A stretch of 64,000 nucleotides of DNA from Mobula hypostoma (lineage: Eukaryota): contig NW_026948187.1 of the NCBI RefSeq assembly GCF_963921235.1, forward strand, positions 5,890,001-5,954,000, in the 5' to 3' direction. Position numbers and translations under genes: made by a program. Shown here piece by piece: positions 21,441 through 64,000 of this stretch. How positions within the stretch are numbered: position 1 is the first letter of the stretch; the number at the start of each line of letters is the position of its first letter. The notes under the pieces are model-generated. The model did no database searches, was not told the DNA's origin, and saw only the letters and a program-made list of their open reading frames with translations.

Positions 21441-21444
21441 GAGG

Positions 21445-22790: not shown

Positions 22791-22821
22791 GAAACTGATT
22801 AAAATATATTAAATTTCACAG

Positions 22822-22886: not shown

Positions 22887-23456
22887 GTGAGGATTGACTG
22901 AATAGTTCCTGTGGTGTGGGAGACTGACATAGATCTGTTGGGAGTCAGTGCAAATGGTTTGGTGAGGGACATTGGTGTGCGCGGAGACAGGTCTCTAGGG
23001 AGAGCGGGTGAATGCGATTAGTTTGCTGATTGAGATAGGCCTGTCAGGAAAGAGTGGACCAGTTATGTTAGTTTGCGGACTTACACAGGACTGCGAGAAG
23101 GGGTGCGGTCTGTGGAAGTGGAGCACTGGGATCAGTTTGGAGACTGTCAGGGTCCGTGGAGTCAGAGCTGGGCAGTGGGCTTAGTTTGGAGACCGGCACG
23201 GGGAGGTGAATGAGGGAGCGGTGTAGTGATATTAGTCTGGAGACGGACACGGGGACGTGGAATGAGGGAGCGGTGTAGTGATATTAGTTAGGAGACGGAC
23301 ACGGGGACATCGGGAGAGCGCGGTGTTGTGAGATTTGTTGGGAGACTGACACGGGACGTGGATAGCTGTGCAGTGGGAATATTTCGAGAACAGTCTCGGG
23401 GCTGTCTGCTGGATGTATTTTGCTTTCTGTTGAAATTGTTCACTCCTTTTTGATAG

Positions 23457-23631
23457 GAAAGCGGCCTCTCATGTCTTGTACGTGACGATGTCTGGAAAGG
23501 TCGAATGCATTGAATGTAAATCGTCCAGCGTGGGTTACCCTTGCAATCGTAAACAACACCGTTTCATCTGCGAGGCGGCTGCACCTTTCCACCCGGATAT
23601 TCCCGAAGAGATCCAGGATCTCCGTCCGTAG
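23457..23631 (+). pseudogene. Paralog A CTLD exon 3 (KAASHVLYVTMSGKVECIECKSSSVGYPCNRKQHRFICEAAAPFHPDIPEEIQDLRP*)
   Basis: tgatag acceptor; homolog of 33502-33700. Confidence 0.85.
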
Positions 23632-33501: not shown

Positions 33502-33700
33502 TCACTTGATTCCTGTCGCCTCCATTGGCTGTTGACAGAGATCCTGAATATTTTCAGGAATATCCGGGAACAAAGGTGCCAACTTCTCGCAGATGAAACG
33601 CCGAGCACGATTGCAAGAATTCCTCCCTGGATACGAGCGGCAGTCTCCGCAGTCTGACGTCCCCGAGGACACCTTGTACAGGAGATCCCAGTCTACATTC
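33502..33700 (-). CDS. Gene B exon 9, CTLD exon 3 plus C-terminal tail (NVDWDLLYKVSSGTSDCGDCRSYPGRNSCNRARRFICEKLAPLFPDIPENIQDLCQQPMEATGIK*)
   Basis: ggatag acceptor, C..FICEK motif, TGA stop at 33502-33504. Confidence 0.88.
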
Positions 33701-36700
33701 CTATCCAAGAGGGTTAACAATTTTAACAGAGACAAAGCAGCTCCAGCAGAGAACCCGAACCGAGACCATCCACAAGCCAATCTCATGAAATCGCGCTCTC
33801 CTGTCAGCCTCTGTCAGTGACTCAACCAGCTCATCCACTCTCTCCCCACAGCTCCGTGCCAGCACCCAGAGAGATACCACGTTCCCAATGTCTCCCGACA
33901 ATCAATTGTCAGTTCCCAACTAATGGCACTAACCCCATGTCTATGCACCGTCGCGTGTCTCCCCAAACTATTAGGACCGAACCGCTTTCTCACCACATTG
34001 CTCTGACGGTCCCCATTTGAATCGAACAGCCCCATCCTCTCCCTTCCGATCTGTTTCACTCCCCGAACAAACCCCACTGTCCCACCGTCTCCGCACAGAC
34101 TTGTGGCTGTCCCGAAATGAATCACGCGTCCACACTCCTGCCTCATCCCTGTGTCGTTCGCAGATTAATCCTGTTTCCCATCACTGTTTCCAGAGCTTCG
34201 TCTCAGCCTCCGAACATATCGCTGTACACCCCGCTTTCACCATAGACTCTGGTCCGCCTCCAGACTTATACCACTGGCTCCCTCTCTCCCACATCCGTGC
34301 GTCAGTTCGCAAATTAATCCCATTAACCCACTGTGTGGTCACCGCCCTGTATCGGTCTCCAAACTACTCCAGTTGTCCTACTCTCGCCCCTCAGATCTAT
34401 GTCATTCACCAAACAAATGCCGCTGTTGCTCCCTCTCCTCACAGCCCGGCGACTATCTCCAAAATAATCCCACTCCACCGCGCTCTCCTCACCGACATGC
34501 GTCAGTACCAAAATAAAATAATCCCTGTGTACTGATCTCTCCCCACTGCCCCCTGGCAGTTTCCGAAATATTCCCACTGCCCTGTCCTTCCCCGACAGAC
34601 ATGTGCCGGCCTCAAAATGTTCCCCTTGTACCACACTCTCCCGACAACCACGTACAGTTTCATCGTAAACTAATCCCATGTTCTCCCTTCAGGACTATGT
34701 CAATGCCCAACTCTCACACACAGATCAGTCCAAATCTCACCCGTCTTCGCATTTTCCAATCCAGTATGCACCGTTTCGGTGCACAAGTTTGTGGGATACA
34801 AAGCTCTGTGAAATTAAATTTATTTGATTAATGCCAAGAATCGAAAACTATGTACGGAGTTTCTCTTAGTTGATTACAACATGAATCTGTGATTGGACGG
34901 TGTGGAGGGAGCTTCACTGATTGCCATATCATGTGAATGTATCATGGGACGGTGTGTAGGAAGATTCACTCTGTGTCTGACCCCGAGAAGGTGTGCTAGG
35001 AGTGTATTGTGGGAATAACTCCGTGGCTAAACCTGGGGGACTGATGGGACGGTGTGGAGGGAGATAACTCTATGTCTGAACCCGAGAATGTGTCCTGGGA
35101 GTGTAGTATGGGTGTCACTCTGTGTCTCACCCCGGAAGTGTCTGATGATTCTTGCGAGATCTTCTTGTGATGTGACACATACCGCTTCATCTCTTGAATT
35201 GATTTCAAGCAGCCTTGCATCACGGTTTGAACATTCTCGCATCGCTGTGTAGAAAGATGTTTCAAACGTGGATACGTAATAACACCGGTCTTTATTTGTG
35301 ATCCAGTCCTTGGAACAGGTATGCTCTGGAAATAGGAATAAGGAGTAGTGAATATCACTCCACACCGTCCCATCGCGCACATAGGGGTGAGAGATAGAGT
35401 GAATCTCCCTCCATTCCGTCCCATCTAACACCACAAGGGATCAGTCCCTTCTACCATCATCAATGATGCCCTCACCCGCATCTCCTGCATTCCCGGACTT
35501 CAGCCCTCACCCCATCTTCCCGTCACCACAACAGGGACAGAGACCCCCTTGTCTTCACCGTCCACCCCACCGGACTTCGGATCCAGCACCTTATCCTCCG
35601 CAACTTCAGCCAAATTCAACAGGACCCACTAGGAAACACATCTTTCACTCTCTCCTCCTCTCCGCTTTCCGAAGGGATCGTTACCTCGGCGACTCCCTAG
35701 TCTACACGTCCCTCCCCACGGAGCAGGTCCTGAACAGTGAGTACAGAGAGCTTGGTCGGAAGTTAAACAGCAGGACCTCGTGGATGGTAATCTCAGGATT
35801 GACACCTGTGCCACATGCCAGTGACGGTAAGAATAGGATGCTCTGGCGGATAAACACGTGGCTGAGAACTGGTGTAGTGGGTAGAGTTTCAGATATCAGG
35901 ATCTTTGGGACCTTTTCTGCGGCAGGTGTGACCTGTACAAGAGACGGGTTACACCTGAACTACAGGGGGACCAATATTCTTGCTGGGAAATTTGTCTGTA
36001 CTATTGTGGAGGCTTAAACTAAATCTGCAGGGGGATGGGGATGGTAACCAGAGTGCCAGAGCAGATAGTGGAGCGGGGGTGAAAATAATTGGTGTTAAAA
36101 GTTCATGAAAAGTCACAAACAGAAGGGTTATGTGTGGTTGTAATAATCATCTGATGTGTTCTCTATTTCAAAGCGAGAAGTATTGTGGGGAAGACTGACG
36201 AGCTGAGGGCGTGGATTGACACATGGAATTACGACATAATATCAATTTGTGAAACTTGGCTACAGGAGGGGCAGGACTGGCAGCTTAATGTTCTAGGGTT
36301 CCGATGTTTCAGACGTGATAGAGGCAGAGGAATGAAGGGAAGCGGGTGCGGCATTGCTGGTCAGGGAAAATCTCACAGCAGTGCTCCGGCAGGACAGATC
36401 AGAGGGCTTGTCTACCGAGGCCTTATGGGTGGAGCTGAAAGACACGAAAGGTATGACCATATTAATGGGGTTGTATTATAGACCATCCAATTGTCAGCGA
36501 GAATGGGAGGAGCAAATCTCCAAAGAGATAGCAGACAACTGCAAGAAACATGAAGTTGTGATAGCAGGGGATTTTAGTTTTCCACATATTGATTGTGACT
36601 TCCATACTGTTAAAGGTCTAGACGGGTTAGAGCTTGTAAAATGCGTTCAGAAAGGTTTTCTAAATCAATATTTAGAGCTACCAACCAGAGACGATATAAT

Positions 36701-39700
36701 ATTAGATTTCCTATTTGGAAACGAGTTAGTACAGGTGACGGAAGTGTATGTAGGGGAACATTTTGATTGCACTGTTCATAACACTATTAGTTTCAATTTG
36801 ACCATGGATAAAGATAGATCTGGTCCTCGGGTTGACGTTCTAAACTGGAAAAAGGCCAAATTTGAAGAAATGAGAAAGCATCTAAAAAGCGTGGATGGGA
36901 CAGGTTGTTCGCTGGCAAGGATATGATTGTTACGTGGGAGGCCTTGAAAGGTGACATTTTGAGAGTGCGGAGTTGAATTTCCCTGTAAGGATTAAAGGAA
37001 AAGTGAGTAAGAGTAAGGAAGCTAGGTTCTCGAGGAATATTGGAACACTGATAAAGAAGGAGAGAAGATGTGTTACCTGTATAGGAAACAGGGGGCAAAT
37101 AAGGTGCTTGAGTAATATAAACAAGTGCAAAAAGTACTTAATAAAGAAATCGTGAGGGCTAAAAGAAGACGGGGTTGCTTTGACAGTCAAGGTGAAGGAT
37201 AATCCGAAGTATTTCCACAGGTTTATTAAGAGCAAGAGGATGGTAAGGGATAACATTTGTCCTAATGAAGATCAGACTGGTCGGTTATGCATGAAACCAG
37301 AAGAAATGGGGGAGATTTTAAATATTTTTTTTTGTGTGTGTCGGTATGTAGTAAGGAAACTGACATGGAGTCAATAGAAATCGGGCAAACAACAAATGAG
37401 GCCATGGAACCGATACAAATTCAAGAGGAAGAGGTGCTTGCAATCTTGAGGTATATATCACCAGGACCTGACAGGGTATTCCCTCGGACCTTAAATGCGA
37501 CTAGTGCTGAAATTGCAGGGGCCCTCTCAGATATATTTAAAATGTCGGTATCCACAGGTGAAGTGCCGGAGAATTGGAGGATAGCTCATGCTGTTCCCCA
37601 GTTTAATCAAGGCTCAGAAAGTAATCCCGGAAATTATAGGCTGTTAGTTTTGACATCATTAGGAGGTAAATTATTGGAAAGATGTATAAGAGATAGGATC
37701 TACAGGTATTTGGATAGACGGGGACTTATTAGGGAGAATCAACTTGGCTTTGTGTGTGGTAGGTCATGTTTAACAAATCCACTAGAGGTTTTCAAGGAGG
37801 TTACCTGGAAAGTAGATGCAGGAAACGCAGTGGATGTTGTCTCTATGGACTTCAGTAAGGCCTTTGACAAGGTCCCGCATGGGAGGTTAGTTAGGAAGAT
37901 TCAGTCGCTAGGTATACATGCAGGGGTAGTAAATTGGATTACACATTGGCTCAATGGAAGAAGCCAAAGAGTGGTAGTAGAGAGTTGCTTCTCAGGACTG
38001 TCACTAGTGGTATGCCACAGGGATCAGTGCTGGGTCCATTTTTATTTGTCATCTGTTCAATGTCCTGGATGATAATGTAGTAAGTTGGATCAGCACATTT
38101 GCTGATCATATCAAGAGTGGAGGAGTAGTCGACAGTGAGGAAGGTTTTTAAAGCTTGCAGAGGGATTTGGACAAACTGGAAAAAATGGGCTGAAAAGTGG
38201 CAGATGAAGTTTAATACAAACAAGTGTGAGGTATTGCACTTTGGAAGGACAAACCAAGGTAGAACATTCAAGGTAAATGGTAGGGCACTGAGGAGTCAGT
38301 AGAACAGAGATCTGAGAATACAGATGCAAAATTCCCGAAAAGGGGAGTAACAGGCAGAAAGGATCGTAACGACAGCTTTTGGAACATCAAGTATATAAAT
38401 CAAAGTATTGAGTAATGCATTGGAAAGCGATGGAGAGGTTGTATAAGACATTGGTGAGGCCGAATTTGGAGAATTATGTGCAGTTTTGGTCATCTAATTT
38501 AGGAAGTATATTAATATGGTCCCAAGACTGCAGAGAAGGTTTACGAGGATTTTTCCGGGACTTGAGAAACTTAGTTACAGATAAAGTTTGAATAGGATAA
38601 ATCTTTATTTCCTGGAGGGTAGAAGCATGAGGGGGGATTTGATAGAGGTGTATATAATTATGGTCTATATATATCCATGTATCGAAATTATGATGGGTTA
38701 TGATGGGTATCGGTAGAGTGAATGCAAGGGGAGATAAAAGAAAAAAAAACAGAGGACGTGGGTTAAGGGTGAAGGGGGGAAAGTTCAAAAGGGAATATTA
38801 GGGCTGGGGGGCTTCTTCACTCATAGAGAGGTGGGGGTGTGGAATGAGCATCCAGATAAAGTAGTAAATGCGGGCCTATATATAATATTTAAGCAAATCT
38901 TGCACAGGTACAATGATAAGAGGTGAGGTGTATTGAGCGATATGGTCAAGGCGCAGGTTAGTGGGACTAGACCAAAAAATGATTTGGCAGAGCCAAGAAG
39001 GGCCAGAAGGCCTGTTTCTGTGCCCTAACGTTTCTATGGTTTCTCCAAGCTGTGATACTTCCCAAAGCGGGTGTTACGAAGTACTACATGAAGGGTGTCC
39101 AAAATTTTCTTCGGGCCTTTCGAGTGTTTGATATTTTGTAACAGTAAAAGATGGAAATAAAAAAAAAGTTTTTTTGCCTAAAATACTGTAGAAATGTGTC
39201 GTCTTTAACTTTTTACCTTTTGTAAATAAGATCATCTTTTGGTCGCTTCGCTGTTCACAGTAACAGAAATGTTGAACAGGGATGCCCAAACTTTTGCAAT
39301 GCACTGCAGAGTGAATCTCCCTCCGCACCACCTCGTCACACTCTCCCGGGGTCGGGCACAGAGTGAAGCTCCCTCTACACCATCACAGAAAACCCTCCCG
39401 TGGTCAGTCAGGAAATGACGCTCCCTCTGATCCGTCCACGGTCACATCACACGCTTTTGCGGATAGACACAGAGTGAAGCTCCATCAGCACCGTCCCATC
39501 ACACATACGGGAACAGACACAGAATGAAACTACCTCAGCAACGTTCATCACACACAGGGGAACAGACACAGAATGAAACTCCCTCAGCACCGTTCATCAC
39601 ACACAGGGGAACAGACACAGAATGAATCTCCCTCAGCACCGTTCATCACACACAGGGGAACAGACACAGAATGAAACTCCCTCAGCACCGTTCATCACAC

Positions 39701-45700: not shown

Positions 45701-48700
45701 CATTACACACTCCCGGGGTCAGTCAGAGACGCTCTCTCTCTCTGCGATCCCATCACTCACTCCCGGATTGAGTCACAGAGTGAAGCCCCCTCTGCAACGT
45801 CCCATTACACACTCCGGGAGTCAGAAACAGACGAAAACACTCCCTCCACGTTCTCATCACACAACACACTCCCTGATTCAGTCACTGAGTGAAGCCCCCT
45901 CTGCAACATCCCGTCACGCTCTCCCGGATTCAGAGTGATAATCTCTCTCCAGGGAGCCATAACACCATGGATTCAGGCGTGGGGTGAAGCTCTCTGGGCA
46001 CTGTCACATCACACTATCCCACTGTCAGACACAAAGTGAAACCTCCTCCACAACGTCCCACCGCACACTCGTGGGTTCGGTGCTAGAGTGCAACTCCTTC
46101 GCGTAGCCCCATCACACACTCACCGAGTCAGACACTTAGTGAATCTCCCGCTATACCATCTCTTCACACACTCTCTATGTTAAGCACAGAGTGACGCTTC
46201 CTCTCACCGTGCCTGCTCGGTCATGAGGAGCGGGTTAAAGAGGGGGATAATGCCTCACCTCTTCTGCTGGTCAACAATTCACAGATCTGAGCTTTGGTTT
46301 CGTTGACAGATCTGTACTTCGTTTGCATCTCAGTGAACTGGTGACGGAGATCAGCGTGCGTTCGGTTAAGATCGATCAGCTCTGAGTTGAGCGCAGATAG
46401 ATTCTTGAGACAGGTTCTCTGAGAGAGATTCAGGTGGGAAGTTAACTCACGATGGTTTCGGTCAGAGGTGATCATAGACTGACGAATCTGTGATACTGAG
46501 AGAGATGGTGAAAGATATTTAGCGTTTACAGTGACACGGGAGTCAGCGTCACGCTACCGAACGGGTCACAGAGAGTGTTGTGTCAGTGTCACGGTGAAGG
46601 GTGTCACAGCGATGGATCTGCTGGTGGCACAGTGAGAGGCGTTGGCGCCACCTTGCGGTTCGTGTCTGTGTCACGCTGAGCTGTTTATAAATTTCCCGGT
46701 GAAGGTGTTATTGTTACAACGGGGTCCGCATCAGTATCGTACAGGGCATGTCCGTGTTGCTGTGTGGTACGTGCCTGTGTCACTGTGATAGGTGTTTTTG
46801 TGCGCCGGCGAGAGGTGTACCGAGTTACTGTGTCTCACTGCGAGAGAACTGTCAGAGTGAGAGACCTGGTGTTGTCACGCTGGGTAGAGTGCCTGTGTCA
46901 TGGTGTTGGGTGTGCCGATCTCACAGAGAGGTGTGTGTCTGTGTCGACCTTGGAGACATATCATGGCCACGGTGTGTGTGACAGTGTCATGCTGAGGTGT
47001 TTGCAGATGTCACCGAGACTTCTATGTCGGCGACACTGTGAAATTAGGTGTTGGTATCACGGTGAGTGGTTTGTCTGTGTCAGAGTTGGGTGCATCGGTG
47101 TTATTTTGAGGGGTTATACCATATCGGTAAGGGGTGTTACAGTGGGTGCGAGCTTTGTCACGGTGCGGAGCTGGACGGGTCACGTTGAGGAACGTGTAGG
47201 TGTCACGGAGTACGGTGCCTCAGTGTCACGGTGAAGGACATGTCGGACTCACTGTGAGGTGTGTTTCGGTGTCGCCTTGGGGAGTGTATCAGTTACACTG
47301 GCAGGGTCATGTCGATGTTAAATTGAGTGGTCCATTTCTGCGTCACGGTGACGCGCGTGTCCCTGTCTCGGTTCAGAGTGCAACTGTGTCACGTTGAACG
47401 TCGTGTTCGTGCGACGGTGACAGGATTATTGGTGTTCTGCTATGTAGCGAGTCGGTGTTTGGATGACTCCTGATTGTGTTACTGTAAAGGCCGTGTCTTT
47501 GTCACGGTTAGGGATGTGTCCGTGGTGAAAAGTTTTTTTTGTCCATGTTACAGTAAGGGGCGTGTCTGTGTCACTGTAGCGTTTTACAATAACAATTTGT
47601 TCCACTCTCTTTATTTGCGGTCTGACTCCACCCGGAGGGCGTTCGACTCACCATGGATCGAGAGCCCGGCCACAATCACGACAAGGCTGGACGTAACTAG
47701 GCAGAGTAGGTAGATCTTACGGTGCGGTCTATTTCCGATGTTCTCTTTTGGTTCCTGTTCGTGCGCACCTGTAGAGAGAGCACAAGACCATAAGACATAG
47801 GAGCAGAAGTACGCCATTCGGCCGATCGAGTTTGCCTTCTCCTCTACCGTTTGAAGTTCGTTTCTCTGACAGAAAGCCCGTCACTAACGGTGTTCACCGG
47901 GGTCGAGGGTGGGACCAGTGATCTTTATCAATTATATCGACTATTTGTAGTAGATTATATAAGTCGCGGTTGGTAAGCCTGCTGACAACACTAACGTCGG
48001 TGCCGAGGTAAACAGTGAAGACATTTACCGCTTACACTGGGATCTCGATTAGCTGGGGAAGAGAGCAGAGCAGTAGCAAATGCGATTTATTTCTCATAAG
48101 AGCGAGCTATAGTAATTCAGAAAGGGAAACAAGGGTACAATGTTCAGAGTGTTCGGGAGAAACCCTGGCGTGTGTTGAATAACAGTGGGACCAAGGGCCC
48201 CACATCCAACGTTCCTAGAGCGTGAAGTGACCGGTGGAGGGATCGGTGAAGGTGTCTGACGCCCCGGCCTTCATCAATCAAGGCACTGAGTACAGGATTA
48301 AGGGGTCACGTTGCAGCTGGACAAGACGTCGGTGAGGCCGCCCTTGGAGTACGGTGTTTAGTTTTGGTCGCCCTGCTATAGGACAGATGTCAATGAGCTG
48401 GACAGATTGCAGAGGGAGATTTACGACGATATTGCCGGGGATCGAGGGATTCAGTTACGGAGATAAGTCGAGCAGGTCGGGACATTAATGCTTGGAGCGC
48501 ACGGGTGACCTTACAGGGGTGTAAACAAACACGTGGGTACACAGACAAGGTGAATGCGTACTGTCATTTTCTTTAAACTTGGAGAACCGTGGACCGGAGC
48601 GCACATGTCTGAGATGATAGCAGAAAGAGATTTAAACTGGGGCACGAGTGACGACTTCCTTTTTTAACCCAGACGGCGTTCCGTATAAGGAACGAGCTGC

Positions 48701-51700
48701 CAGAGGAACTGATGGATGCCGATGCATTAGGACTTGAATTGTCGGGCGTATGGCACGTGACCACTTCAGACTGACGTCATTACTGTGAACTCTGACCTCC
48801 TTGTGCAGTCACTGGCATTTCGGCGGGTGCCGAGGTAATGGGAGGATCTTCATAATCATCGATGAGAATTTCGTCTTTCCGAAGGTTCAGCATTGAGTAG
48901 GTGGATGTGACACCGTCTGGGAAGAAAGAAAGATAATGTGAGAGACAAAGATATAGAAGGAGGAGGAATGGTTACTTCGAGTGCCAGGATTTAGATGCTT
49001 CAGAAAGGACAGGGAAAGAGGCAAAAGAGGTGGAACCTTTGATCAGAGATAGTGTCACAGCTACAGAAGAGCAGGAAGACAAGCAGGAATTGTTTATACC
49101 AAGGGGCTGGAGACTACCAAGACAGTATATGAGGTGTTACTACTCCAAACTTGTCCCTACACCCCATCTCTTGCAACCATTCAGGGCTCCAAATAGGCCT
49201 TCCAGGTGAAACAACACTTCACTTGTCAGTCTGTTGGGGTCGACTATTGCATCCGGTACTCCCGGTGCGACCTCATCTACATCGGTGAAACCCGACGCAG
49301 ATTGGGGGACCACTTCGTCGAGCACCTCCACTCCGTCCGCCACAACAGACATGATCTCCCGGTAGCCACCCACTTCAACTCTGTTTCCCACTCCCATTCA
49401 GATATGTTCATTCATGGCCTCCTCTACCGTTATGATGAGACTAAACTCAGGTTGGAGGAGCAACACCTCATATACCGTCTAGGTAGTCCCCAGTTTCTTG
49501 GTATGAACATAGAATTCTCCAACTTCCGGTAATTCCCTCCCGCTCCCTTCCTCTATCCCTATTTCACTCTACCCCCTACCCCAGCTCCCTTATGGTTCCG
49601 CCTCCTTCTTCTACCACCCATTTATTCAGGGCTATGAAGTCACTGCTTCCGCTCCCCCACCTCTTTGTCTTTCAAATTACTGGTCTTTCAACTGAAGCTA
49701 CAAGCATTCTTCAAATCCTTCCCCATCTTTCATTCTTCAGACCTGACGAAGGGTTCCGGTCCGAAACGTCGACTCATCGTTTCTGACTGATGCTGCCCGA
49801 CCTGCTGAGTTCATCCAGCGTACACACAGGAGATTAGTGTGCAAAATTAAAGCACACGGTATTGGGGGTAAGGTATTGATGTGGATGGAAAATTGGTTAG
49901 CAGACAGGAAGCAAAGAGTTAGAATAAACGGGACCTTTTCAGAATGGCAGGCGGTGACTAGTGGGGTACCGCAAGGCTCAGTGCTGGGACCCCAGTTGTT
50001 TACAATATATATTAATGATTTGGATGAGGGAATTAAATGCAGCATCTCCAAGTTTGCGGATGACACGAAGCTGGGTGGCAGTGCTAGCTGTGAGGAGGAT
50101 GGTAAGATTATGCAGAGTGACTTGGATATGTTGGGTGAGTGGGCAAATTCATGGCAGATGAAATTTAATGTGGATATATGTGAAGTTATCCACTTTGGTG
50201 GCAAAAGTAGGAAAACAGATTATTATCTGAATGGTGGCCGATTAGGAAAAGGGGAGGTGCAACGAGACCTGGATGTCATTATACACCAGTCATTGAAAGT
50301 GGGCATGCAGGTACAGCAGGCGGTGAAAAAGGCGAATGGTATGCTGGCATTTATAGCGAGAGGATTCGAGTACAGGAGCAGGGAGGTACTACTGCAGTTG
50401 TACAAGGCCTTGGTGAGACCACACCTGGAGTATTGTGTGCAGTTTTGGTCCCCTAATCTGAGGAAAGACATACTTGCCATAGAGGGAGTACAAAGAAGGT
50501 TCACCAGATTGATTCCTGGGATGGCAGGACTTTCATATGAAGAAAGACTGGATGAACTGGGCTTGTACTCGTTGGAATTTAGAAGATTGAGGGGCGATCT
50601 GATTGAAACGTATAAAATCCTAAAGGAATTGGACAGGCTAGATGCAGGAAGGTTGTTTCCGATGTCGGGGAAGTCCCGAACAAGGGGTCACAGTTTGAGG
50701 ATAAAGGGGAAGCCTTTTAGGACCGTGATTAGGAAAAAACTTCTTCACACAGAGAGTGGTGAATCTGTGGAATTCTCTGCCACGGGAAACAGTTGAGGCC
50801 AGTTCATTGGCTATATTTAAGAGGGAGTTAGATATAGCCCTTGTGGCTACGGGGATCAGGGGGTATGGAGGGATGGCTGGGGTGGGGTTCTGAGTTGGAT
50901 GATCAGCCATGATCATAATTAATGGAGGTGCAGGCTCGAAGGGCCGAATGGCCTACTCCTGCACCTATTTTCTATGTTTCTATGTTTCTATGTACTGAAA
51001 GTGTTGCTTCTATAACTCTATAGGGTGTTCTTTCTTTGTTTTTTTGTTTTTTTTATGTAGACGGCCCAATAGTAACAAGGACATCGAGGGGCAGATAGGG
51101 GGATAGATTATGGAGAGGTGTAATAATAGCAGTGTTATCGTAGTGGGAGATTTAATTTCTCAATTATCGATAGGCATGCCCTAAGATTGAATGGTTCAGA
51201 TGGGAGAGAGTTCAGTAGGTGTGCTTAAAAAGATTTCTTGAAACAACATGTTGATAAGCCTTCAAGAGGTGAGGCTGTACTTAAACTGGTATTGGAAAAT
51301 GAACCTGGTCAGATGCCAGGTCTCTCAGTAGGAAAGCATTTTGGAGGTAGTGATCACAATTCTATCTCCTTTACAATAGCATTAGAAGGGAATAGGAAAG
51401 CGTTTAATTGGAGGAGGGAGAAATATGAGGCTATCAGGCAGAAAATTGGAAGCTTAAATTGGGAACAGCGTTTCTCAGGGAAATCTACGGAAGAAATGTG
51501 GCAAATGTGAAGAGATACTTGATTGGGTTTTGCGTAGATAGGTTCCAATGAGACAGGGAAAGGATAGTAGCAGCAGGAACAGGGGTGCACAAAGGCTGTT
51601 ATAACTCTATTCAAGAAGAAAAGAAGATGTTACCATAGATTAAAAAAAAACTAGGTAATGATAGAGATCGAGAAGATTATAAGGCTATCAGGAAGGAACT

Positions 51701-54700: not shown

Positions 54701-57700
54701 AAGTATCCTGCCATTTACTTTGTACTCTGCCTTGGAGTTTGTCCTTCAAAAGTGTACCACCTCACACTTCCGCCACCTCCAACGGGATCCCACCACTAAG
54801 CATATCTTTCCCTCCCCGCCTCTCTCTGCATTCCGCAGGGATCGCTCCCTACACAACTCCCTTGTCCATTCGTCCCCCCGCCCCCCATCCCTCTCCACTG
54901 ATCTCCCTGCTGGCACTTATCCGTGTAAGCGGAACAAGTGCTACACATGCCCTTACACTTCCTCCCTTACCACCATTCAGGGCCCCAAACAGTCCTTCCA
55001 GGTGAGGCATCACTTCACCTGTGAGTCGACTGGGGTGATATACTGCGTCCGGTGCTCCCGATGTGGCCTTTTATATATTGGTGAGACCCGACGCAGACTG
55101 GGAGACCGCTTTGCTGAACATCTACGCTCTGTCCGCCAGAGAAAGCAGGATCTCCCAGTGGCCACACATTTTAATTCCACATGCCATTCCCATTCTGACA
55201 TGTCTATCCAATGCCTCCTCTACTGTAAAGATGAAGCCACACTCAGGTTGGAGGAACAACACCTTATATTCCGTCTGGGTAGCCTACAACCTGATGGCAT
55301 GAACATTGACTTCTCTAACTTCCGCTAGGCCCCACCTCCCCCTCGTACCCCATCTGTTACTCTTTTTAATGCACACATTCTTTCTCTCACTCTACTTTTT
55401 CTCCCTCTGTCCCTCTGAATATACCTCTTGCCCATCCTCTGTGTCACCCCCCCCCCCCGTCTTTCTTCCCGGACCTCCTGTCCCATGATCCTCTCGTATC
55501 CCCTTCTGCCTATCACCTGTCCAGCTCTCGGCTCCATCCCTCCCCCTCCTGTCTTCTCCTATCATTTTGCATCTCCCCCTCCCCCTCCAGCTTTCAAATC
55601 CCTTACTCACTCTTCCTTCAGTTAGTCCTGACGAAGGGTCTCGGCCTGAAACGTCGACTGCGCCTCTTCCTATAGATGCTGCCTGGCCTGCTGCGTTCAC
55701 CAGCAACTTTGGTGTATGTTGCTTGAATTTCCAGCATCTGCAGAATTCCTGTTGTTTGTGTTGTCCACCTCACACTTCTCCGGGTTGAACTCCATCTGCC
55801 ACTTCTCAGCCCACTTCTGCATCCTATCAATGTCTCTCTGCAATCTTTGAAAATCCTCTACACTATCTACAACACCGCCAACCTTTGTGTCGTCTGCAAA
55901 CTTGCCAACCCAGCCTTCTACCTCCACATCCAGGTCGTTAATAAAAATCAAGAAAAGTAGAGGTCCCAGAACAGATCCTTGTGGGACACCACTGGTCACA
56001 ATCCTCCAATCTGAATGTACTCCTTCCACCACCACCCTCTGCCTTCTGCACGCAAGCCAATTCTGAATCCACCTGTCCAAACTTCCCGGGATCCCATGCC
56101 TTCTGACTTTCTGAATAAGCCTACCATGTGGAGCCTTTCAAGTGACTTCCGGAAGTCAATATATATCACATCCACTGAACTACTCTCATCTATATGCCTG
56201 GTCACCCCATCAAAGAACTATATCAGGCTTGTTAAAAACGATCTGCCCTTCACAGAGCCATGCTGACTGTCTCTGATCAGACCATGCTTCTCTAAATGCC
56301 CAGAGATCCTAACTCTAAGAATCTTTTTCCAACAGCTTTCCCACCACAGACGTAAGGCTCACTAGTCTATAATTACCCTGGCTATCCCTACTGACTTTTT
56401 TGAACAAGGGGACAACATTTGCCTCCCTCCAATCCTCCGGTACCATTCACGTGGACAAGAGGACATAAAGATCCTAGCTCTGCCTCAGAGGGCAGTGGAG
56501 GCCAATTCTCTGGATTCTTTCAAGAAAGAGGTAGATCGATCTCTTAAAGTTAGCGGAGTCAAGGGATATGGGGAGAAGGCAGGAAAAGGTTACTGATTGT
56601 GGATGATCAGCCATTATCACAGTGAATAGCGGTGCTGACTCGAAGGGATGAATGGCCTAATCCTGTACCTATTGTCTGTTGTGCATTAGACCACCCATCG
56701 ACATTTGTATTCAGATCATTTGTATATATGACAAAAAGGAGACGTCCCAGTGGAATGTCATAGATACAGATCACATCATAGTAGTAAAAGAGGTAAAAGA
56801 ATAACAGAATGCAGAGTAAAGTGTCACAGTTACAGATAAAGTGCAGTGCAGGTGGATATGAATATTCAAGGGGACACGACGTAGTAGACGGTGATGTCTG
56901 GAGTGCATTATCGTCCTCGGGGACCGTTGCATAGTCTGATAAACGCGGGCAGAAACTGCCTTTGAGTCTGGCGAGGCTTGGTTTCGTATCTTCCCCCGAT
57001 GTGGGAGGGTATGGGTGGGGAGTGGGTGTCGTAAGAACATCGTCCAGGGTGAGTCGGAGTTTTTATTACGGTGACTGCTTCAGCGATGCAGCGGGAAGGG
57101 TGGATGGAGACCTTGGAGGTGAGGCTGCCTGATCTGCACGATTCAAGCTGACTGAGAACAAAGTGCCATAAATGACAGATTGTCACTTGCTGGAAAGAGG
57201 ACAATCAATGGAGCAGAGACACTTAAAACGTGTTAAATATCAGGAGCCGAGTAACAACCTTTTGTTACCCCGATGGCGGTCAGTCAGTGGCACAAGCTGC
57301 CAGAGGTAGTGGCCGAGGCAGATGCATTAGAAACTTGGACACTTGGGAGTATGACACGTGATCTCTTTAGTGTCGGTACTGTGAACTCTAACCTGTTCGT
57401 GCAGTGACTCGCAGTTCGCCGGGTCCCGAGGCAACGGGGGGATCCTCATCCTCATCGATGAGGGTTTCGTCTTTCCCAAAGTTCAGCTCTGAGTAGGTGG
57501 AGGTCAGCCGGTCTGGGGAAGAAAGAGGAGAGGATGAGAGAGAGATTTAGGAGGACAGACCAGTAAAGCATGGTGGAGGGGTGAGGACAGAGAAACGGAG
57601 CAGAGATGCGGGAAGATAGAGTGCGGAAAGAGACGGCTGAGTGGTAGGTATTGAAGGTGAGAGAGAGATGGAAGTGAGGGGGAAGAGTCGAGGAGCCAGA

Positions 57701-59470
57701 GCAGGAGAGTGAGGATGGAAAGGATGAATGGAGTGGGGAGAGATGAGTGAGCGGTTGGAGCGATGGGCGAGAAAATGGGATTGAATGGGGGAGAGAGAAC
57801 GGTGACAGAAAGGAGAAAGACGGAGAGAGGGAGGGAGAAAAGGGAGCGAGAGATGCGTAGGCGAGTGGCAGGGGTGAGAACATCAGCGAAGGAGAAGGTA
57901 AGGGAGTGGGATTGAGAGGGGGATTTGGGACGCTCAGGGGTGCGAGACAATTGGAGCGAAAGAGAAAGGGGACAGTTTAAAGATAAAGGGTTAAGAGGCA
58001 GTGGAGAGCGTGAGGGAGAGAGTGACGGGGTGAATACAGAGAGGAAGAGGGTGTGGATGGGGAGTTGCTCGGAAGATTGGGTCACAGGGAGATGGGGTGT
58101 ACGGGGAATTAGACAGAGATAGGAGGGAGCGAAAGTGGCGGGGAGAAGTGAGCGCAGTGATGGAAAGAGTGCGCGAGAAGAACGAGAGCGGTAGAGAGGG
58201 GCGATATGAAAGAGACTGTGGAAAAGGGGAGAGTGGTGAAAGAGAGTTAGATGGAGAGGAAATGGCAATGGAGACAGCGCGAAGCGTAGAAGGGTAGAAA
58301 CAGTGATAAGGGTAGGGAAAGGGGAGAGAGTGAGGGTAAGAGAAAGAATTAGTGGGCCAGAGAAGAAGAAAAGAAGGTGAGAGCGGATTAGCGTGTGAGA
58401 GATAGGGGGAGAAAGAAGGAGGCAGGGGGAAGAGAGTAGAAACGACGAGAGAGTAGGGTTAGAACACGAAGAGAGTTGTTCACATTTTATAGAGTTCCCT
58501 TTCCTCACTGCCTCTTTCTACTCTCCTCCCTCCTCGCCACCCCTCCCAAGGTGTTTCCTACTCACCGGCCATACCGCAACACTCCCTGCTCTCACTCCAC
58601 GCCCAACCCCCACCACACAGCGCCCCTCCTCAGTGCCCCCAATTTAACACCCTCTCACGGTTCTCCCACCACACCACAAATCCCGTGGCGTTCTCTGCAC
58701 TGACCCCACCCAGAGCAATCTGCTCATCCCTTTCCACAACCCTCCCTCTATGCTCTGCCTCACCCCGCCCCTTCCCAGAGCGCTCCCTCCTCACCGACCC
58801 TCCCATAGAGCTCGTATCTCACCGCCTCCCGCACGCATTGCTTCTGACTTATTCTCAAACAGAGAATCATTAGTGTCAACTGCACCCGTGCCACGAGGTT
58901 TCTCCACAGGAATGGACACATCAGATGAACAAAGTCAAACCAACAAAATGAAACTGACCTTCATCTGTCCGGGGAACGGAGAGGCATTTGATATTCGGTT
59001 CTGCGTACGATACATCAGGTTCAGCTGGGGACAGAAAAGTGAGAGTCTGAAACAGGGTGAGGCTCCCTCCACACTGCCCCGTCAGAAACTCCCGGGGTCA
59101 GACACAGAGTCAAGCTCACTCCATCCCGTTCCATTACCCACTCCCTGGGTCGGCAACAAAGTGAATCTCCCTCCACACCATCCCATCACAAAGACACGGG
59201 ATGAGACACAGAGTGAAGCTCCCTCCCCACCGTTCCATCACACACTCCCGGAGCCAGACACAAAGAGTCTCTCCATCCACCCCGTCCCATCACACACTCC
59301 AATTGTCAGACACTGAGTGTCGCTCCCTCCTCCCCGTCCCGTTACACACTCCAGGGGACAGAAAGAGATTGAAACTCTCTCCTTCCGTCACGGCCCCACT
59401 CACTTCTCGTTGGAAACCGTGAGTCTGGTTTGACGAGCTGAACATTCGCATAAGTCTGGCTGTCCTCCAT
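33502..59470 (-). CDS. Gene B: intact-looking type II TM C-type-lectin-like (NKC/KLR/CLEC-like) inhibitory receptor; join(59470-59404,59024-58959,57512-57393,48916-48797,47768-47652,46495-46259,35325-35183,34805-34741,33700-33502), 377 aa
   Basis: All nine exons have GT/AG boundaries and compatible phases; 67+66+120+120+117+237+143+65+199=1134 nt with no internal stop. Cytoplasmic / TM / neck / three-CTLD-exon layout is that of NK-complex genes. Motifs CSKDW..RCYY, LLEINSRDEA, YWIG, FICEK. Confidence 0.85.
34741..34805 (-). CDS. Gene B exon 8, CTLD exon 2 (SFVSHKLVHRNGAYWIGKCEDG)
   Basis: tttcacag acceptor, gtgaga donor, 65 nt, WIG motif; same size as paralog exon 22822-22886. Confidence 0.88.
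35183..35325 (-). CDS. Gene B exon 7, CTLD exon 1 (EHTCSKDWITNKDRCYYVSTFETSFYTAMRECSNRDARLLEINSRDEA)
   Basis: Classic CTLD N-terminal motif C-x3-W-x6-CYY...C...LLxI; AG/GT boundaries, 143 nt. Confidence 0.92.
35450..35720 (+). mobile_element. Penelope-like fragment
   Basis: HIF..LLLSAFRRDRYLGDSLV matches 54771-55328. Confidence 0.75.
35720..39042 (+). mobile_element. Near-full-length degenerate CR1 (ORF1 end plus ORF2 EN-RT)
   Basis: VISGLTPVP; ICETWL; VIAGDFSFP; KAFDKVPH; tttctatg tail. Confidence 0.92.
39075..39307. mobile_element. Tc1/mariner terminal remnant
   Basis: Reverse complement of the end, CAGTGCATTGCAAAAGTTTGGGCATCCC, resembles a Tc1 TIR. Confidence 0.55.
39308..40730 (-). repeat. 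Degenerate 52-bp minisatellite including a homogenised 49-bp variant (~39490-39790)
   Basis: aacagacac recurs at 39512, 39561, 39610, 39659. Confidence 0.85.
40935..41500 (+). mobile_element. Penelope-like element 3' part (GIY-YIG C-terminus plus pLTR tail)
   Basis: LPVATHFNS..LRLEEKHLIYRLGSLQPLGMNIEF. Confidence 0.85.
41381..41416 (+). ncRNA. Hammerhead ribozyme motif (degenerate stem II) in a Penelope pLTR
   Basis: AGTCCTGATGAAGGGATCCGCTCCGAAACGTCGAC. Confidence 0.55.
41505..44852 (+). mobile_element. CR1 ORF2 (degenerate) with a nested CR1 3' fragment at 41701-42312
   Basis: NARSIRNK endonuclease start; RPHLEYCVQF; two tttctatg tails. Confidence 0.9.
44855..46205 (-). repeat. Degenerate 52-bp minisatellite in the neck-CTLD intron of gene B
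   Basis: Visible array. Confidence 0.85.
46259..46495 (-). CDS. Gene B exon 6, coiled-coil neck/stalk
   Basis: 237 nt, phase 1-1, open; heptad-like Leu pattern, two Cys, N-glycosylation sequons NLS, NLS, NRT, NET. Confidence 0.88.
46520..47600 (-). repeat. Degenerate ~20-bp (CCGTGACACCGACAC-like) tandem repeat in the TM-neck intron; homologous arrays at 17590-17940 and 19305-19660 in paralog A
   Basis: Repeated gtgtcacggtg / caccgtgacac motifs in the same intron of both paralogs. Confidence 0.75.
47652..47768 (-). CDS. Gene B exon 5, transmembrane (AHEQEPKENIGNRPHRKIYLLCLVTSSLVVIVAGLSIH)
   Basis: ctctctacag acceptor, gtgagt donor, 117 nt; basic residues then an uncharged hydrophobic segment (type II anchor). 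Confidence 0.9.
47930..48720 (+). mobile_element. Old CR1 RT fragment
   Basis: Degenerate VRPPLEYGV.FWSP. Confidence 0.6.
48797..48916 (-). CDS. Gene B exon 4, ITIM exon copy 2 (GVTSTYSMLNLRKDEILIDDYEDPPITSAPAEMPVTAQG)
   Basis: Acceptor ctttcttcccag, donor gtcaga, 120 nt phase 1-1, ITIM STYSML; homologous to 57393-57512 including flanking intron. Confidence 0.8.
48968..53570 (+). mobile_element. Older CR1 ORF2 interrupted by a Penelope element (49095-49821) and a younger CR1 (49822-50992)
   Basis: Endonuclease sequence at 48968-49094 resumes at ~50993; ORF 49837-50796 is an open RT C-half (GVPQGSVLGP, KFADDTK). Confidence 0.88.
49739..49774 (+). ncRNA. Hammerhead ribozyme motif in a Penelope pLTR
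   Basis: AGACCTGACGAAGGGTTCCGGTCCGAAACGTCGACT. Confidence 0.55.
53598..53785 (+). mobile_element. tRNA-derived V-SINE (HE1-like)
   Basis: A-box-like gtaatggttagc, B-box ggattcaattcc, V-domain tgtacgttctccccgtgaccgcg...tttcctcccac. Confidence 0.75.
54771..55764 (+). mobile_element. Penelope-like element (open GIY-YIG endonuclease domain) with 14-bp TSD
   Basis: VIYCVRCSRCGLLYIGETRRRLGDRFAEH; TSD CCACCTCACACTTC at 54757-54770 and 55765-55778. Confidence 0.92.
55624..55659 (+). ncRNA. Minimal type I hammerhead ribozyme motif in a Penelope pLTR
   Basis: AGTC-CTGACGA-AGGGTCTCGGCCT-GAAAC-GTC-GACT; stem I AGTC/GACT, palindromic stem III. Confidence 0.7.
57393..57512 (-). CDS. Gene B exon 3, ITIM exon copy 1 (RLTSTYSELNFGKDETLIDEDEDPPVASGPGELRVTART)
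   Basis: Acceptor ctttcttccccag, donor gttaga, 120 nt phase 1-1, canonical ITIM STYSEL. Confidence 0.8.
57520..58470. repeat. GA-rich low-complexity intron (polypyrimidine on the gene B sense strand)
   Basis: Strong purine/pyrimidine strand bias. Confidence 0.8.
58959..59024 (-). CDS. Gene B exon 2 (EPDVSYAEPNIKCLSVPRTDE), degenerate ITIM VSYAEP
   Basis: Acceptor tctgtccccag, donor gtcagt, 66 nt, phase 1-1; same acceptor and EPDV start at 14267 in paralog A. Confidence 0.75.
59404..59470 (-). CDS. Gene B exon 1 (MEDSQTYANVQLVKPDSRFPTR)
   Basis: ATG at 59470, donor GTGAGT; same 67-nt length as paralogous exons at 11193 and 13375. Confidence 0.85.
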
Positions 59471-60830
59471 GCTGTCTCCGATTCTCGGCGTCTCTGAGCT
59501 CAGCGAGGGGATGTGACCGATATCAGAGGCAGCCCCTGTTGACAGCGGAGTCAGACCGACAGAAACAAACACCGGATGAGCAGCTGATAAAGAGAGGAGC
59601 CGAGAGCAGGGGAGGAAGTGCTGGGGAAGAGGGAGATTCAGGGTGTGAGAAGGGGTGGTCTGGAGCGATGGGAGTGGCCGGGGGTAGAGTAGTGAGACTG
59701 GGCAGATACAGAGGGAGGGGAGAGTGAGGGGAAGGTTAGGGCTTGGCGGAAAGAGAGACGTTGGATACAGGGGTCAGAAAGGGAGAGCGGAATGAAAGAA
59801 GGGGAGGGCGAGAAGTGGGAGAGAACGGGGAGAGAATTTAGAGTAGAGAGTGAGAAAACAGAGGGCGAGCTAACGGGGGAAAGCAGGAGAACGAGAAACG
59901 AAAAGGGAGGGGCGGAGGAAGAGGGAGGAGAGATACAGGGAAGGGGCGATTGTGGGGGAAGGAATAAGGAAGTTGGAAGGATATAGGAAGAGAAGGAAGG
60001 AGAGAGAATACAATGGAAAAAGGGGAAGAGTGGGGGAAAACGAGTGAAGAGGGAGGGAGAGACGGACGGGTATGTTGTCTCTCACGCAGAGCCTTTATTG
60101 TCGGAGAGATTTACAACGAACACCAGCCCCCTCTCCCGCTAACCCCAACCTCCAGGTGATTCCTGGTTTGAGTGTCAGCGCTCCCATTGCTCTGCTTATC
60201 GCTGGGGCTTCAGACCGTCTGTGCTCTGGAAACCACGGCCCCGGGACAAACACGCTACACCCACCGAAGTAAGCGAGCCCCCTCCCTCCGAGAATACGTC
60301 AGAGCAATAGATTGCCATTTTAGATTGTGTAACACTTATGAAAGAAAGCGGACATTTAGATCTTGAAGGTCACAGGAAACCAGCGCAGGCTGATCGGTAT
60401 CTGCAGTTTGAATCTCTTCACCCATTGGAGGATAAGCCGGGGGTTGTCAGTGTCAGTGTTTCAGAGAAGTATTGAAAGCTTGCTGCTGCACTGAGTGAGC
60501 TAAATACACAGCTAGAAATAAAAATAGCAAGGACCTCAGCCCAACAGACAGAGTTCAGGAGCTATCTCAAAAACCCTCCATCACTTCCTGTCTGTAATTT
60601 TCTCTCTCTGCGTCCCTCACTCTCCCCTCACTATCTCTCTATTTCTCTCCCAGGAATACCTCCAACCCGCTTCAATTTCGCTACTCTCTGCAACTCTCTC
60701 ATTTTCCTCTTACCCCGCTCCCTCCTCTGCCGTTCTATCTCACTGCTCTCCTCACGAAGACTTCTTTTTATTCTCCCCACGCTTTCTACCCTACGAGAGA
60801 GAGTCAACGTACCTTGTTCCTATTTTCCAG

Positions 60831-60903: not shown

Positions 60904-60949
60904 TTATGTGTCAGATACACAGAAGATATATCCACACCGGACTGAATAT

Positions 60950-63988: not shown

Positions 63989-64000
63989 ATGGAGGACAGC
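63989..64000 (+). CDS. Start of paralog C exon 1 (MEDS...), continues beyond the window
   Basis: ATGGAGGACAGC and ~1.2 kb upstream are an inverted copy of the gene B start. Confidence 0.7.

What the first reader, a model, noticed from the sequence alone, without database searches (positions are those of the whole stretch)
33502..59470. Hidden intact 9-exon NK-complex-like inhibitory lectin receptor buried in transposons
Seen: nine small exons across 26 kb of LINE and minisatellite DNA splice with GT-AG and matching phases into a 377-aa ORF (cytoplasmic Tyr motifs, TM, coiled-coil neck, CTLD). Established: separate cytoplasmic, TM, stalk and three CTLD exons is the architecture of mammalian NKC genes (KLR/CLEC families), and (S/I/V/L)xYxx(I/V/L) is the ITIM consensus. 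Inference: a lineage-expanded NK/myeloid inhibitory receptor family in a probable cartilaginous fish, where such receptors are poorly characterised.
Basis: partly seen in the sequence, partly recalled or inferred. Interest (0 to 1): 0.85.

Follow-up and report, generated by a model that had tools for sequence, protein, structure and literature searches.

The report
Ray ITIM-bearing lectin-like receptor gene
The nine scattered exons are a real, transcribed devil-ray gene for a membrane receptor of the NK-cell lectin type with two inhibitory motifs; it is already machine-annotated in RefSeq and is one of hundreds of copies in stingrays and mantas.

Summary
Nine GT-AG exons on the minus strand (59470 to 33502) splice in phase into a 377-aa ORF. 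That ORF is 100% identical to a RefSeq protein of Mobula hypostoma named "oxidized low-density lipoprotein receptor 1-like". The gene is therefore not hidden, only uncharacterised.

RNA-like contigs from four runs join E4 to the TM exon and the TM exon to the neck exon at the predicted bases.

The protein is a type II membrane protein with these parts:
- a 141-aa cytoplasmic tail with two canonical ITIMs (STYSEL, STYSML), each on its own 120-nt exon;
- an uncharged TM segment;
- a coiled-coil neck, predicted to form a dimer;
- a compact C-type lectin-like domain with no Ca2+/sugar motifs.

Its nearest sequence and fold relatives are NKC group V receptors: KLRB1, CD94, CD69, CLEC9A and LOX-1.

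The family is large, with 298 clusters at E<=1e-10. Every member whose species I saw comes from four myliobatiform rays.

Inhibitory signalling, NK or myeloid expression and NKC synteny remain inferred. I rate it a new member of a known kind, of moderate interest.

In passing: the tail-to-tail neighbour is a pseudogene, and a head-to-head neighbour shares a nearly identical signalling tail but has a different lectin domain.

The parts
59404..59470 (-). Exon 1: start codon at 59470, 22 codons plus 1 nt, with the non-canonical Tyr motif QTYANV (a YxN type)
   Evidence: Homologous N-termini (MDDSETYxNVKF) occur in family proteins.
58959..59024 (-). Exon 2: 66 nt, phase 1-1, with VSYAEP. This is a degenerate copy of the family's VSYAEL/VSYVEL ITIM (Leu to Pro at +3).
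57393..57512 (-). Exon 3: a 120-nt phase 1-1 ITIM cassette. ITIM 1 is STYSEL, residues 49-54, encoded at 57501-57484.
   Evidence: The 3-nt overhang CAG of the RNA contigs upstream of E4 fits the end of E3.
48797..48916 (-). Exon 4: the second 120-nt ITIM cassette, a duplicate of E3 (62% aa identity). ITIM 2 is STYSML, residues 89-94, encoded at 48905-48888.
   Evidence: It is spliced to the TM exon in contigs of X5, X17 and X24.
47652..47768 (-). Transmembrane exon: basic juxtamembrane NRPHRK followed by an uncharged TM segment IYLLCLVTSSLVVIVAGLSI
   Evidence: Joints are seen on both sides in RNA contigs.
46259..46495 (-). Neck exon: 79-aa heptad-rich stalk with four N-glycosylation sequons and Cys192 and Cys235. 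A minor out-of-frame alternative acceptor lies at 46418.
   Evidence: A parallel coiled-coil dimer is predicted.
35183..35325 (-). CTLD exon 1: C0-C0' hairpin, helix 1 and Cys274
   Evidence: (PDB phmmer E 3e-7 to NKG2D and CD69).
34741..34805 (-). CTLD exon 2: helix 2 and the YWIGKC motif
   Evidence: Conserved in paralogue A and in the family.
33502..33700 (-). CTLD exon 3: shortened loop region with a CxxC, then FICEK, a conserved C-terminal tail (APLFPDIPENIQDLCQQP) and the stop TGA at 33504-33502

Best explanation
This is a functional, transcribed gene of the devil ray Mobula hypostoma. It encodes a 377-aa type II transmembrane C-type lectin-like receptor of the NK-receptor (group V-like) kind.

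Shown:
- the nine-exon structure, with two of the splice joints seen in RNA;
- the Lectin_C domain and the CTLD fold;
- two ITIM-consensus motifs, 40 residues apart, on duplicated cassette exons;
- a TM segment with no charged residue;
- membership of a very large ray-specific family.

Inferred mechanism:
- The protein sits on leukocytes as a dimer held by its coiled-coil neck, possibly disulfide-linked through Cys192 and/or the invariant tail Cys367.
- Its compact, Ca2+-independent lectin-like domain binds a protein ligand rather than a sugar.
- On ligation the two ITIM tyrosines (Y51, Y91) are phosphorylated by Src-family kinases.
- They then recruit the tandem-SH2 phosphatases SHP-1/SHP-2 and damp activating signals, as NKG2A, NKR-P1B, Ly49, CLEC12A and DCIR do in mammals.
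For: Gene model:
- In-phase GT-AG exons give 377 aa.
- The product is 100% identical to RefSeq P0069 and the gene span is identical.

Transcription:
- RNA-like contigs of X5, X10, X17 and X24 join E4>TM and TM>neck at the predicted bases, and depth is zero in those introns.
- A 528-nt X10 contig extends about 392 nt upstream of E4.
- X5 holds 33% of the sampled words of the CTLD region.

Domain:
- Pfam Lectin_C scores 31.1 bits against a gathering score of 22.6.
- PDB phmmer hits are CLEC9A, NKG2D, KLRB1A/B, KLRF2, CD69, LOX-1, Dectin-1 and CLEC12A, at E 1e-11 to 1e-7.
- The AF2 model has pLDDT 78.8. Foldseek finds CLEC9A, LOX-1, CLEC5A, LLT1, CD94/NKG2A, CD69 and NKR-P1 in the PDB, and KLRB1, CD94, CD69, CLEC9A and KLRG1 in Swiss-Prot.
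- No EPN/QPD/WND motif is present in the sequence.

Signalling tail:
- ITIMs lie at residues 49-54 and 89-94, and the TM core is uncharged.
- 114 of 157 family members with a TM segment carry at least one ITIM, and STYSEL is the commonest.

Dimer:
- The homodimer prediction scores 0.56 against a best control of 0.00. The mark was reached by 21 of 30 solved homodimers and 0 of 23 solved single chains. The runs share at least 69% of contacts and the partner pLDDT is at least 69.
Against: - No functional, cell-type or ligand data exist.
- ITIM consensus matches occur by chance, and some ITIM receptors also signal positively.
- The membrane-distal YxN motif (TYANV) and DDYEDP could recruit other adaptors.
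- The E1-E2-E3 and neck-CTLD joints were not observed directly here.
- The runs are only guessed to be RNA.
- The dimer prediction may reflect memory of solved coiled-coil CTLR dimers (caveat).
- The C-terminal half of the CTLD is so divergent that it finds nothing in PDB or Pfam on its own.
- Group II lectins (CLEC4A, CLEC10A, Mincle) are interleaved with group V among the hits.
Confidence: 0.72

Rival explanations
1. It is an endocytic or scavenger pattern-recognition receptor of myeloid or endothelial cells, as its RefSeq name suggests (LOX-1/CLEC-like). On this reading the tyrosine motifs act mainly as YxxΦ sorting or internalisation signals rather than as inhibitory switches.
For: RefSeq names it OLR1-like. 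LOX-1, CLEC9A, CLEC12A and Dectin-1 are among the best sequence and fold matches. All five tyrosines lie in Yxx-hydrophobic or YxN contexts.
Against: - LOX-1 ranks no better than KLRB1, CD94, CD69 or CLEC9A, at about 21% identity, so there is no sign of orthology.
- The duplicated, strongly conserved S-T-Y-S-x-L-N cassette, present in up to five copies in relatives, resembles the ITIMs of NKG2A rather than a sorting signal.
- Massive, fast-evolving expansion is typical of NK-type receptors, not of scavenger receptors.
Confidence: 0.15
2. It is a transcribed but functionally decaying member of a birth-and-death family: an expressed pseudogene, or a copy with a non-binding lectin domain.
For: - The tail-to-tail neighbour is a pseudogene.
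- The E2 ITIM is degenerate.
- An out-of-frame splice variant exists.
- The donors of E2-E4 are weak (GTCAGT, GTTAGA, GTCAGA).
Against: - The 377-codon ORF is intact across nine exons.
- The M. birostris orthologue P0071 is also 377 aa, intact and 85% identical.
- All ten family-invariant residue positions, eight of them cysteines, are kept; they are defined on an alignment that includes this protein.
- The in-frame joints are the ones seen in three or four runs.
Confidence: 0.08
3. It is an activating or dual-function receptor: the YxN motif in exon 1 and the tyrosines recruit Grb2/PI3K or Syk-type kinases.
For: TYANV fits the pYxN Grb2-SH2 consensus (established knowledge), and the motif is conserved as TYxNV across the family.
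Against: There is no charged TM residue for adaptor pairing, no ITAM or hemITAM (no DEDxYxxL), and two canonical ITIMs are present.
Confidence: 0.05

Closest known systems
NKR-P1B / KLRB1 family (mouse, rat, human; NKC group V)
   Same: Type II orientation, a cytoplasmic ITIM, an uncharged TM, a stalk with cysteines, a Ca2+-independent CTLD encoded by three exons, a dimer, and a multigene fast-evolving family. These are the best AFDB Swiss-Prot fold matches (TM 0.60-0.65), and RefSeq uses this name for many ray paralogues.
   Different: Only 18-20% identity. The ray protein has a much longer tail (141 aa) with two ITIMs on separate cassette exons, an 80-aa coiled-coil neck, a shortened loop region with an extra CxxC and a WIGKC cysteine, and a conserved 25-aa C-terminal extension with an invariant Cys.
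CD94/NKG2A (KLRD1/KLRC1)
   Same: Two ITIMs in tandem with a very similar local sequence (from knowledge: NKG2A has VIYSDLNL and ITYAELNL; here STYSELNF and STYSMLNL). A group V CTLD with a reduced loop region. Among the top fold matches.
   Different: NKG2A works as a heterodimer with CD94 and its ITIMs lie in one exon about 32 residues apart. Here the spacing is 40 residues on duplicated exons and a homodimer is predicted. No orthology is shown.
CLEC12A (MICL), DCIR (CLEC4A) and CD72: ITIM-bearing myeloid/B-cell lectin receptors
   Same: Type II, ITIM-bearing, with a coiled-coil or stalk neck. They appear in the sequence and fold hit lists, and RefSeq names many paralogues CLEC12A-like.
   Different: DCIR is a Ca2+-dependent EPN lectin of group II. 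The ray protein has no such motif. CLEC12A has a single ITIM.
LOX-1 / OLR1 (the RefSeq name of this gene)
   Same: Type II, a coiled-coil neck, a group V CTLD and a disulfide-linked dimer. Foldseek TM is about 0.58-0.63.
   Different: LOX-1 is not a better match than a dozen other NKC proteins. From knowledge, LOX-1 has a short tail without ITIMs. The name reflects best-hit transfer, not orthology.
Teleost ITIM-bearing lectin receptors (cichlid cKLR, zebrafish illr; recalled from knowledge, not tested here)
   Same: Lineage-specific multigene families of type II lectin-like receptors in fishes, with inhibitory and activating forms.
   Different: No sequence comparison was made here. The ray family was found only in Myliobatiformes with the searches used.

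Membership tests
C-type lectin-like domain (Pfam PF00059 Lectin_C) | Profile score above the curated gathering threshold | tested here: met
   31.1 bits against a cutoff of 22.6, residues 265-351, covering profile positions 3-107 of 107. Single exons alone gave no hit.
C-type lectin-like domain (Pfam PF00059 Lectin_C) | CTLD fold: two helices, two sheets, a WIGL-type core motif and the C1-C4 cysteines | tested here: met
   The AF2 model (pLDDT 78.8) has helices at 30-39 and 50-60 plus strands. Foldseek E is about 2e-7 to CLEC9A, LOX-1 and CD69, with TM 0.55-0.65. YWIGK, Cys274 and Cys349 are invariant in the family.
Group V (NK-cell-receptor type) C-type lectin-like receptors | Type II membrane topology with an N-terminal cytoplasmic tail, one TM segment, a stalk and one C-terminal CTLD | tested here: met
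   Read directly from the 377-aa sequence.
Group V (NK-cell-receptor type) C-type lectin-like receptors | Loss of the Ca2+/carbohydrate ligands (no EPN/QPD, no WND) | tested here: met
   None of these motifs is present between WIGK and FICEK, in this protein or in the 74-sequence family consensus.
Group V (NK-cell-receptor type) C-type lectin-like receptors | Phylogenetic grouping with NKC-encoded CTLDs rather than with group II or other groups | tested here: inconclusive
   The nearest sequence and fold neighbours are mostly group V. The only full-domain alignments are to NKG2D, KLRB1 and CD94.
Group V (NK-cell-receptor type) C-type lectin-like receptors | Location in a region syntenic with the mammalian NKC (MHC paralogue 12) | not tested
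   Only 10-kb flanks without DNA were available. At least five family members share the 7.46-Mb scaffold. [quoted passage not shown]
ITIM-bearing inhibitory immunoreceptors | At least one (S/I/V/L)xYxx(I/V/L) in the cytoplasmic tail | tested here: met
   STYSEL at 49-54 and STYSML at 89-94. QTYANV, VSYAEP and DDYEDP do not fit.
ITIM-bearing inhibitory immunoreceptors | No charged TM residue for pairing with ITAM adaptors | tested here: met
   The TM core has no K/R/D/E. Nine relatives do have an R or K there, and four of these lack ITIMs.
ITIM-bearing inhibitory immunoreceptors | Phosphotyrosine-dependent recruitment of SHP-1/SHP-2/SHIP and inhibition of activation | not testable with these tools
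   Needs biochemistry or cell assays.
LOX-1/OLR1 orthologue (RefSeq name) | Specific, best-reciprocal relationship to OLR1 | tested here: inconclusive
   OLR1 is one of many near-equal hits, at E about 1e-7 and 21% identity. Paralogues carry ten other CLEC/KLR names. No reciprocal test was possible.

The most novel reading that the evidence does not exclude
Stingrays and mantas have built their own very large, fast-evolving family of paired NK-type lectin receptors. Most are ITIM-bearing, and a few have an Arg or Lys in the TM and no ITIM. The family would play the role of Ly49/KLR/KIR in sensing polymorphic self ligands, perhaps MHC class I. Three features would generate its diversity: ITIM cassette exons whose number varies by duplication or splicing; head-to-head gene pairs whose signalling tails are homogenised by gene conversion while their lectin domains diverge; and a compact CTLD with extra disulfides and a conserved C-terminal tail. 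This would be the first candidate polymorphic NK-receptor system in cartilaginous fish.
Probability: 0.2. Interest if true: 0.7.

Novelty: new member of a known kind. Interest (0 to 1): 0.42.

Why it matters
What NK-like cells of cartilaginous fish use as receptors is largely unknown. [quoted passage not shown]

This gene is a clean, expressed, full-length example of a ray-specific family with hundreds of members that so far carries only automatic and mutually inconsistent names: OLR1-like, KLRB1B, CLEC12A-like, CD209-like or uncharacterized.

It offers concrete reagents and hypotheses: two ITIM cassettes, a predicted dimeric neck, and a compact CTLD. These could be used to test whether inhibitory lectin-type receptors of the NK kind predate bony vertebrates or arose convergently.

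As a single gene it is ordinary. The family-level picture is the interesting part.

Tried and rejected
- Pfam on single exons, and on stop-free frames around them, gave nothing for the CTLD exons and only chance coiled-coil hits for the neck.
- PDB phmmer with the last CTLD exon alone gave only a chance LRR hit, YopM, to the tail PDIPExIQDL.
- My first minimal six-exon model (275 aa) is also in phase. I rejected it as the main form because E4 is spliced to the TM exon in three runs and because the RefSeq protein and its full-length homologues contain E2-E4.
- A search for extra neck exons by homology or by a phase-aware scan found none that was credible.
- The multi-stretch hits of the representative search (P0002, P0008, P0013, P0028 and others) are repetitive or unrelated ORFs, not family members.
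- The look-up of encoding contigs returned gene tables but no DNA, so synteny and dN/dS could not be done.
- Five literature searches found no paper describing this family. One paper read for 'shark' hits had only the surname Sharkey.
- I did not type the spliced protein into any tool. Once P0069 proved identical, it served as the reference.
Full report
**1. The observation**

Reading the minus strand, I first found six exons by eye:
- a start exon at 59470;
- a TM exon;
- a long heptad-rich neck exon;
- three exons with C-type-lectin hallmarks: CSKDW...CYY, YWIGKC and FICEK.

These six already splice in phase into 275 aa. A phase-aware scan for AG...GT segments with open frames then recovered three more phase 1-1 exons between exon 1 and the TM exon. 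They are 66, 120 and 120 nt long.

All acceptors have good pyrimidine tracts and all donors begin GT. The donors of E2-E4 are weak: GTCAGT, GTTAGA and GTCAGA. E3 and E4 are duplicates of each other: about 80% nt identity over exon plus the downstream intron, and 62% aa identity.

**2. Independent support for the model**

An exhaustive HMMER search with the last exon (65 aa) found 48 proteins. Most of them match it at their very C-terminus. A word-indexed search with one of these found 298 clusters at E<=1e-10.

One of them, P0069, is 100% identical to my spliced model over all 377 residues. Its source name is [quoted passage not shown]. Its gene spans 25,969 bp in assembly GCA_963921235.1, the same as 33502-59470. 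So the window is Mobula hypostoma and the gene is already in RefSeq.

Full-length relatives in Hypanus sabinus, Hemitrygon akajei and Mobula birostris show the same order of modules. That order is E1-like MDDSETYxNVKF, E2-like EPDVSYxELNF, one to three STYSELNF cassettes, TM, neck and CTLD.

**3. RNA**

Four small runs of the same species hold exon-sized parts of the locus. These are X5, X10, X17 and X24; they are recorded only as a guess to be RNA.

Laid on 46000-49999, their contigs cover only the exons, and depth is zero in the E4-TM and TM-neck introns. They show two joints:
- 47652>46495 (TM to neck), in X5, X10 and X17;
- 48797>47768 (E4 to TM), in X5, X17 and X24.

Both joints have GT..AG ends on the minus strand.

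The contigs run 3 nt past the start of E4 with the letters CAG. That is the end of E3, but not of E1 (GAA) or E2 (AAG). One X10 contig carries about 392 nt upstream of E4, enough for E3+E2+E1 plus a 5' UTR.

One X5 contig of depth 4 uses an internal acceptor at 46418. This shifts the frame and stops after 17 codons.

One X10 contig differs at 6 of 235 neck positions and continues into a different TM-like sequence, so a close paralogue is also expressed.

I could not lay reads on the other joints, because only one call was allowed.

**4. What the protein is**

- Pfam Lectin_C passes its threshold: 31.1 bits against 22.6.
- The first CTLD exon alone finds NKG2D, CD69, CLEC9A, DCIR, KLRF2, KLRB1 and LOX-1 in the PDB.
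- The whole domain finds the same set. End-to-end alignments are only to NKG2D, KLRB1 and CD94.
- An AlphaFold2 model built on a 74-sequence family alignment has pLDDT 78.8 and the two helices and strands of a CTLD.
- Foldseek ranks CLEC9A, LOX-1, CLEC5A, LLT1, CD94/NKG2A, CD69 and NKR-P1 first in the PDB.
- In Swiss-Prot it ranks KLRB1, CD94, CD69, CLEC9A, CLEC5A, KLRG1 and OLR1 first.
- A few group II or collectin domains are interleaved with these.

The domain is compact. It has 104 residues from the first to the last canonical cysteine, and 87 residues cover 105 profile positions. It has no EPN/QPD or WND motif.

It has extra family-invariant cysteines: WIGKC, a CxxC, one more before FICEK, and one in a conserved C-terminal tail (APLxPDIPExIQxLCQQP). 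The C-terminal exon alone is too divergent to hit Pfam or PDB.

**5. Signalling parts**

The tail has five tyrosines. Two fit the ITIM consensus: STYSEL at 49-54 and STYSML at 89-94. They are exactly 40 residues apart because each sits at the same place in a 120-nt cassette exon.

VSYAEP in E2 is a degenerate form of the family's VSYAEL/VSYVEL ITIM. QTYANV in E1 is not an ITIM; it fits a YxN motif.

The TM core is uncharged. Across 157 relatives with a TM segment, 114 have one to five ITIMs. Nine have an Arg or Lys in the TM core, and four of those have no ITIM. That hints at activating partners but is only a lead.

The neck has four N-glycosylation sequons and two cysteines.

A homodimer prediction of residues 165-377 scored 0.56 against a best control of 0.00. 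That mark was reached by 21 of 30 solved homodimers and 0 of 23 solved single chains. The runs share at least 69% of contacts and the partner pLDDT is at least 69. The interface is a parallel coiled coil through 167-238 with Cys192 facing Cys192, plus tail residues 360-367. This supports dimerisation but does not show it, and it may reflect memory of solved relatives.

**6. Mechanism**

The best reading is an inhibitory, dimeric, Ca2+-independent lectin-like receptor. It would recruit SHP-type phosphatases through two phospho-ITIMs, like NKG2A, NKR-P1B, Ly49, CLEC12A or DCIR. The structure and motifs are shown. The signalling, the ligand and the cell type are inferred.

**7. Family and novelty**

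Every family member whose species I saw belongs to four myliobatiform rays. That covers the 120 best hits and the 20 proteins whose clusters I looked up (58 listed entries). It includes the weakest C-terminal-exon hits.

Sharks, skates and chimaeras did not appear, but the searches would miss distant relatives.

RefSeq names within the family are inconsistent: KLRB1B, CLEC12A/B-like, CLEC2B-like, CLEC9A-like, CLEC7A-like, CD209-like, CD69-like, NKG2A-like, ASGR1-like, OLR1-like and uncharacterized.

I found no paper on the family. A 2023 survey of elasmobranch MHC paralogues says the NKC-equivalent region may be incompletely assembled.

The gene is thus a new, uncharacterised member of a known kind of receptor. 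The family has some unusual traits: cassette ITIM exons, a compact CTLD with a conserved tail, and a huge ray-specific expansion.

**8. Surroundings**

- **Pseudogene.** On the plus strand at about 11.2-23.7 kb lies a tail-to-tail paralogue with two exon-1 copies, a TM exon, a neck and three CTLD exons. Its first CTLD exon has Cys to Tyr and a 1-nt insertion that leads to a stop. No protein is annotated there. It is a pseudogene.
- **Inverted repeat.** Upstream of the gene, 59459-60696 is repeated in inverted orientation at 64000-62763 with 92% identity. A second MEDS... start codon sits at 63989 on the plus strand. This is the head-to-head neighbour P0103.
- **Concerted evolution.** Within each Mobula species the two neighbours have almost identical cytoplasmic tails (123/124 and 121/124) but very different CTLDs (55-59/135). 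Orthologues between species show the opposite pattern: tails 107/124, CTLDs 114-115 of 133-135. That is the signature of concerted evolution of the signalling half.
- **Introns.** They carry reverse-transcriptase, endonuclease and GIY-YIG fragments and 49-52-bp minisatellites.

Noticed in passing
window 11193-23660, + strand: A tail-to-tail paralogue of the receptor gene. It has two exon-1 copies (11193: MDDSETSGNVKF, no Tyr; 13375: MVDSETYVNMNF), a TM exon near 17400-17523, a neck near 19640-19800 and CTLD exons near 22255-22400, 22830-22900 and 23450-23632. CTLD exon 1 has the first Cys changed to Tyr and a 1-nt insertion that gives a premature stop. No protein is annotated there. It is probably a pseudogene. 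A related Mobula-type model (P0027; I did not look up its species) skips the lectin exons.
   Followed up: partly
window 59459-60696 and 62763-64000: A 1.24-kb inverted repeat (92% identity) that holds the two start exons of a head-to-head gene pair. The second gene (P0103, LOC134341561) starts at 63989 on the + strand and runs off the window. The spacer is filled with a 52-bp minisatellite.
   Followed up: partly
P0069/P0103 (M. hypostoma) against P0071/P0110 (M. birostris): Concerted evolution. The cytoplasmic tails of the two neighbours are 99% identical within each species but 86% between species, while the lectin domains are orthologous (about 85%) and only about 42% identical between neighbours. 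This suggests gene conversion of the signalling half within the inverted repeat.
   Followed up: partly
window 46418: A minor alternative acceptor inside the neck exon, seen in one X5 contig of depth 4. It removes 77 nt, shifts the frame and stops after 17 codons.
   Followed up: yes
window 46259-46493 (X10 contig): An expressed close paralogue. The contig is 97% identical to the neck exon but continues into a different TM-like sequence that is not in this window.
   Followed up: no
window 54720-55328 + and 49206-49532 +: ORFs with a GIY-YIG nuclease domain next to reverse-transcriptase fragments, which suggests Penelope-like retroelements in the long introns. The region 49100-50000 has very high RNA contig depth.
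   Followed up: partly
family proteins P0113, P0128, P0135: Relatives with an Arg or Lys in the TM core and no ITIM. They are possible activating counterparts of the inhibitory members.
   Followed up: no
window 1-14300, 21400-22800, 34880-35430, 39465-39797, 45552-45934, 59045-59382, 60940-62740: One 49-52-bp minisatellite family recurs throughout the window in both orientations, including inside the first intron and right next to CTLD exon 1.
   Followed up: partly
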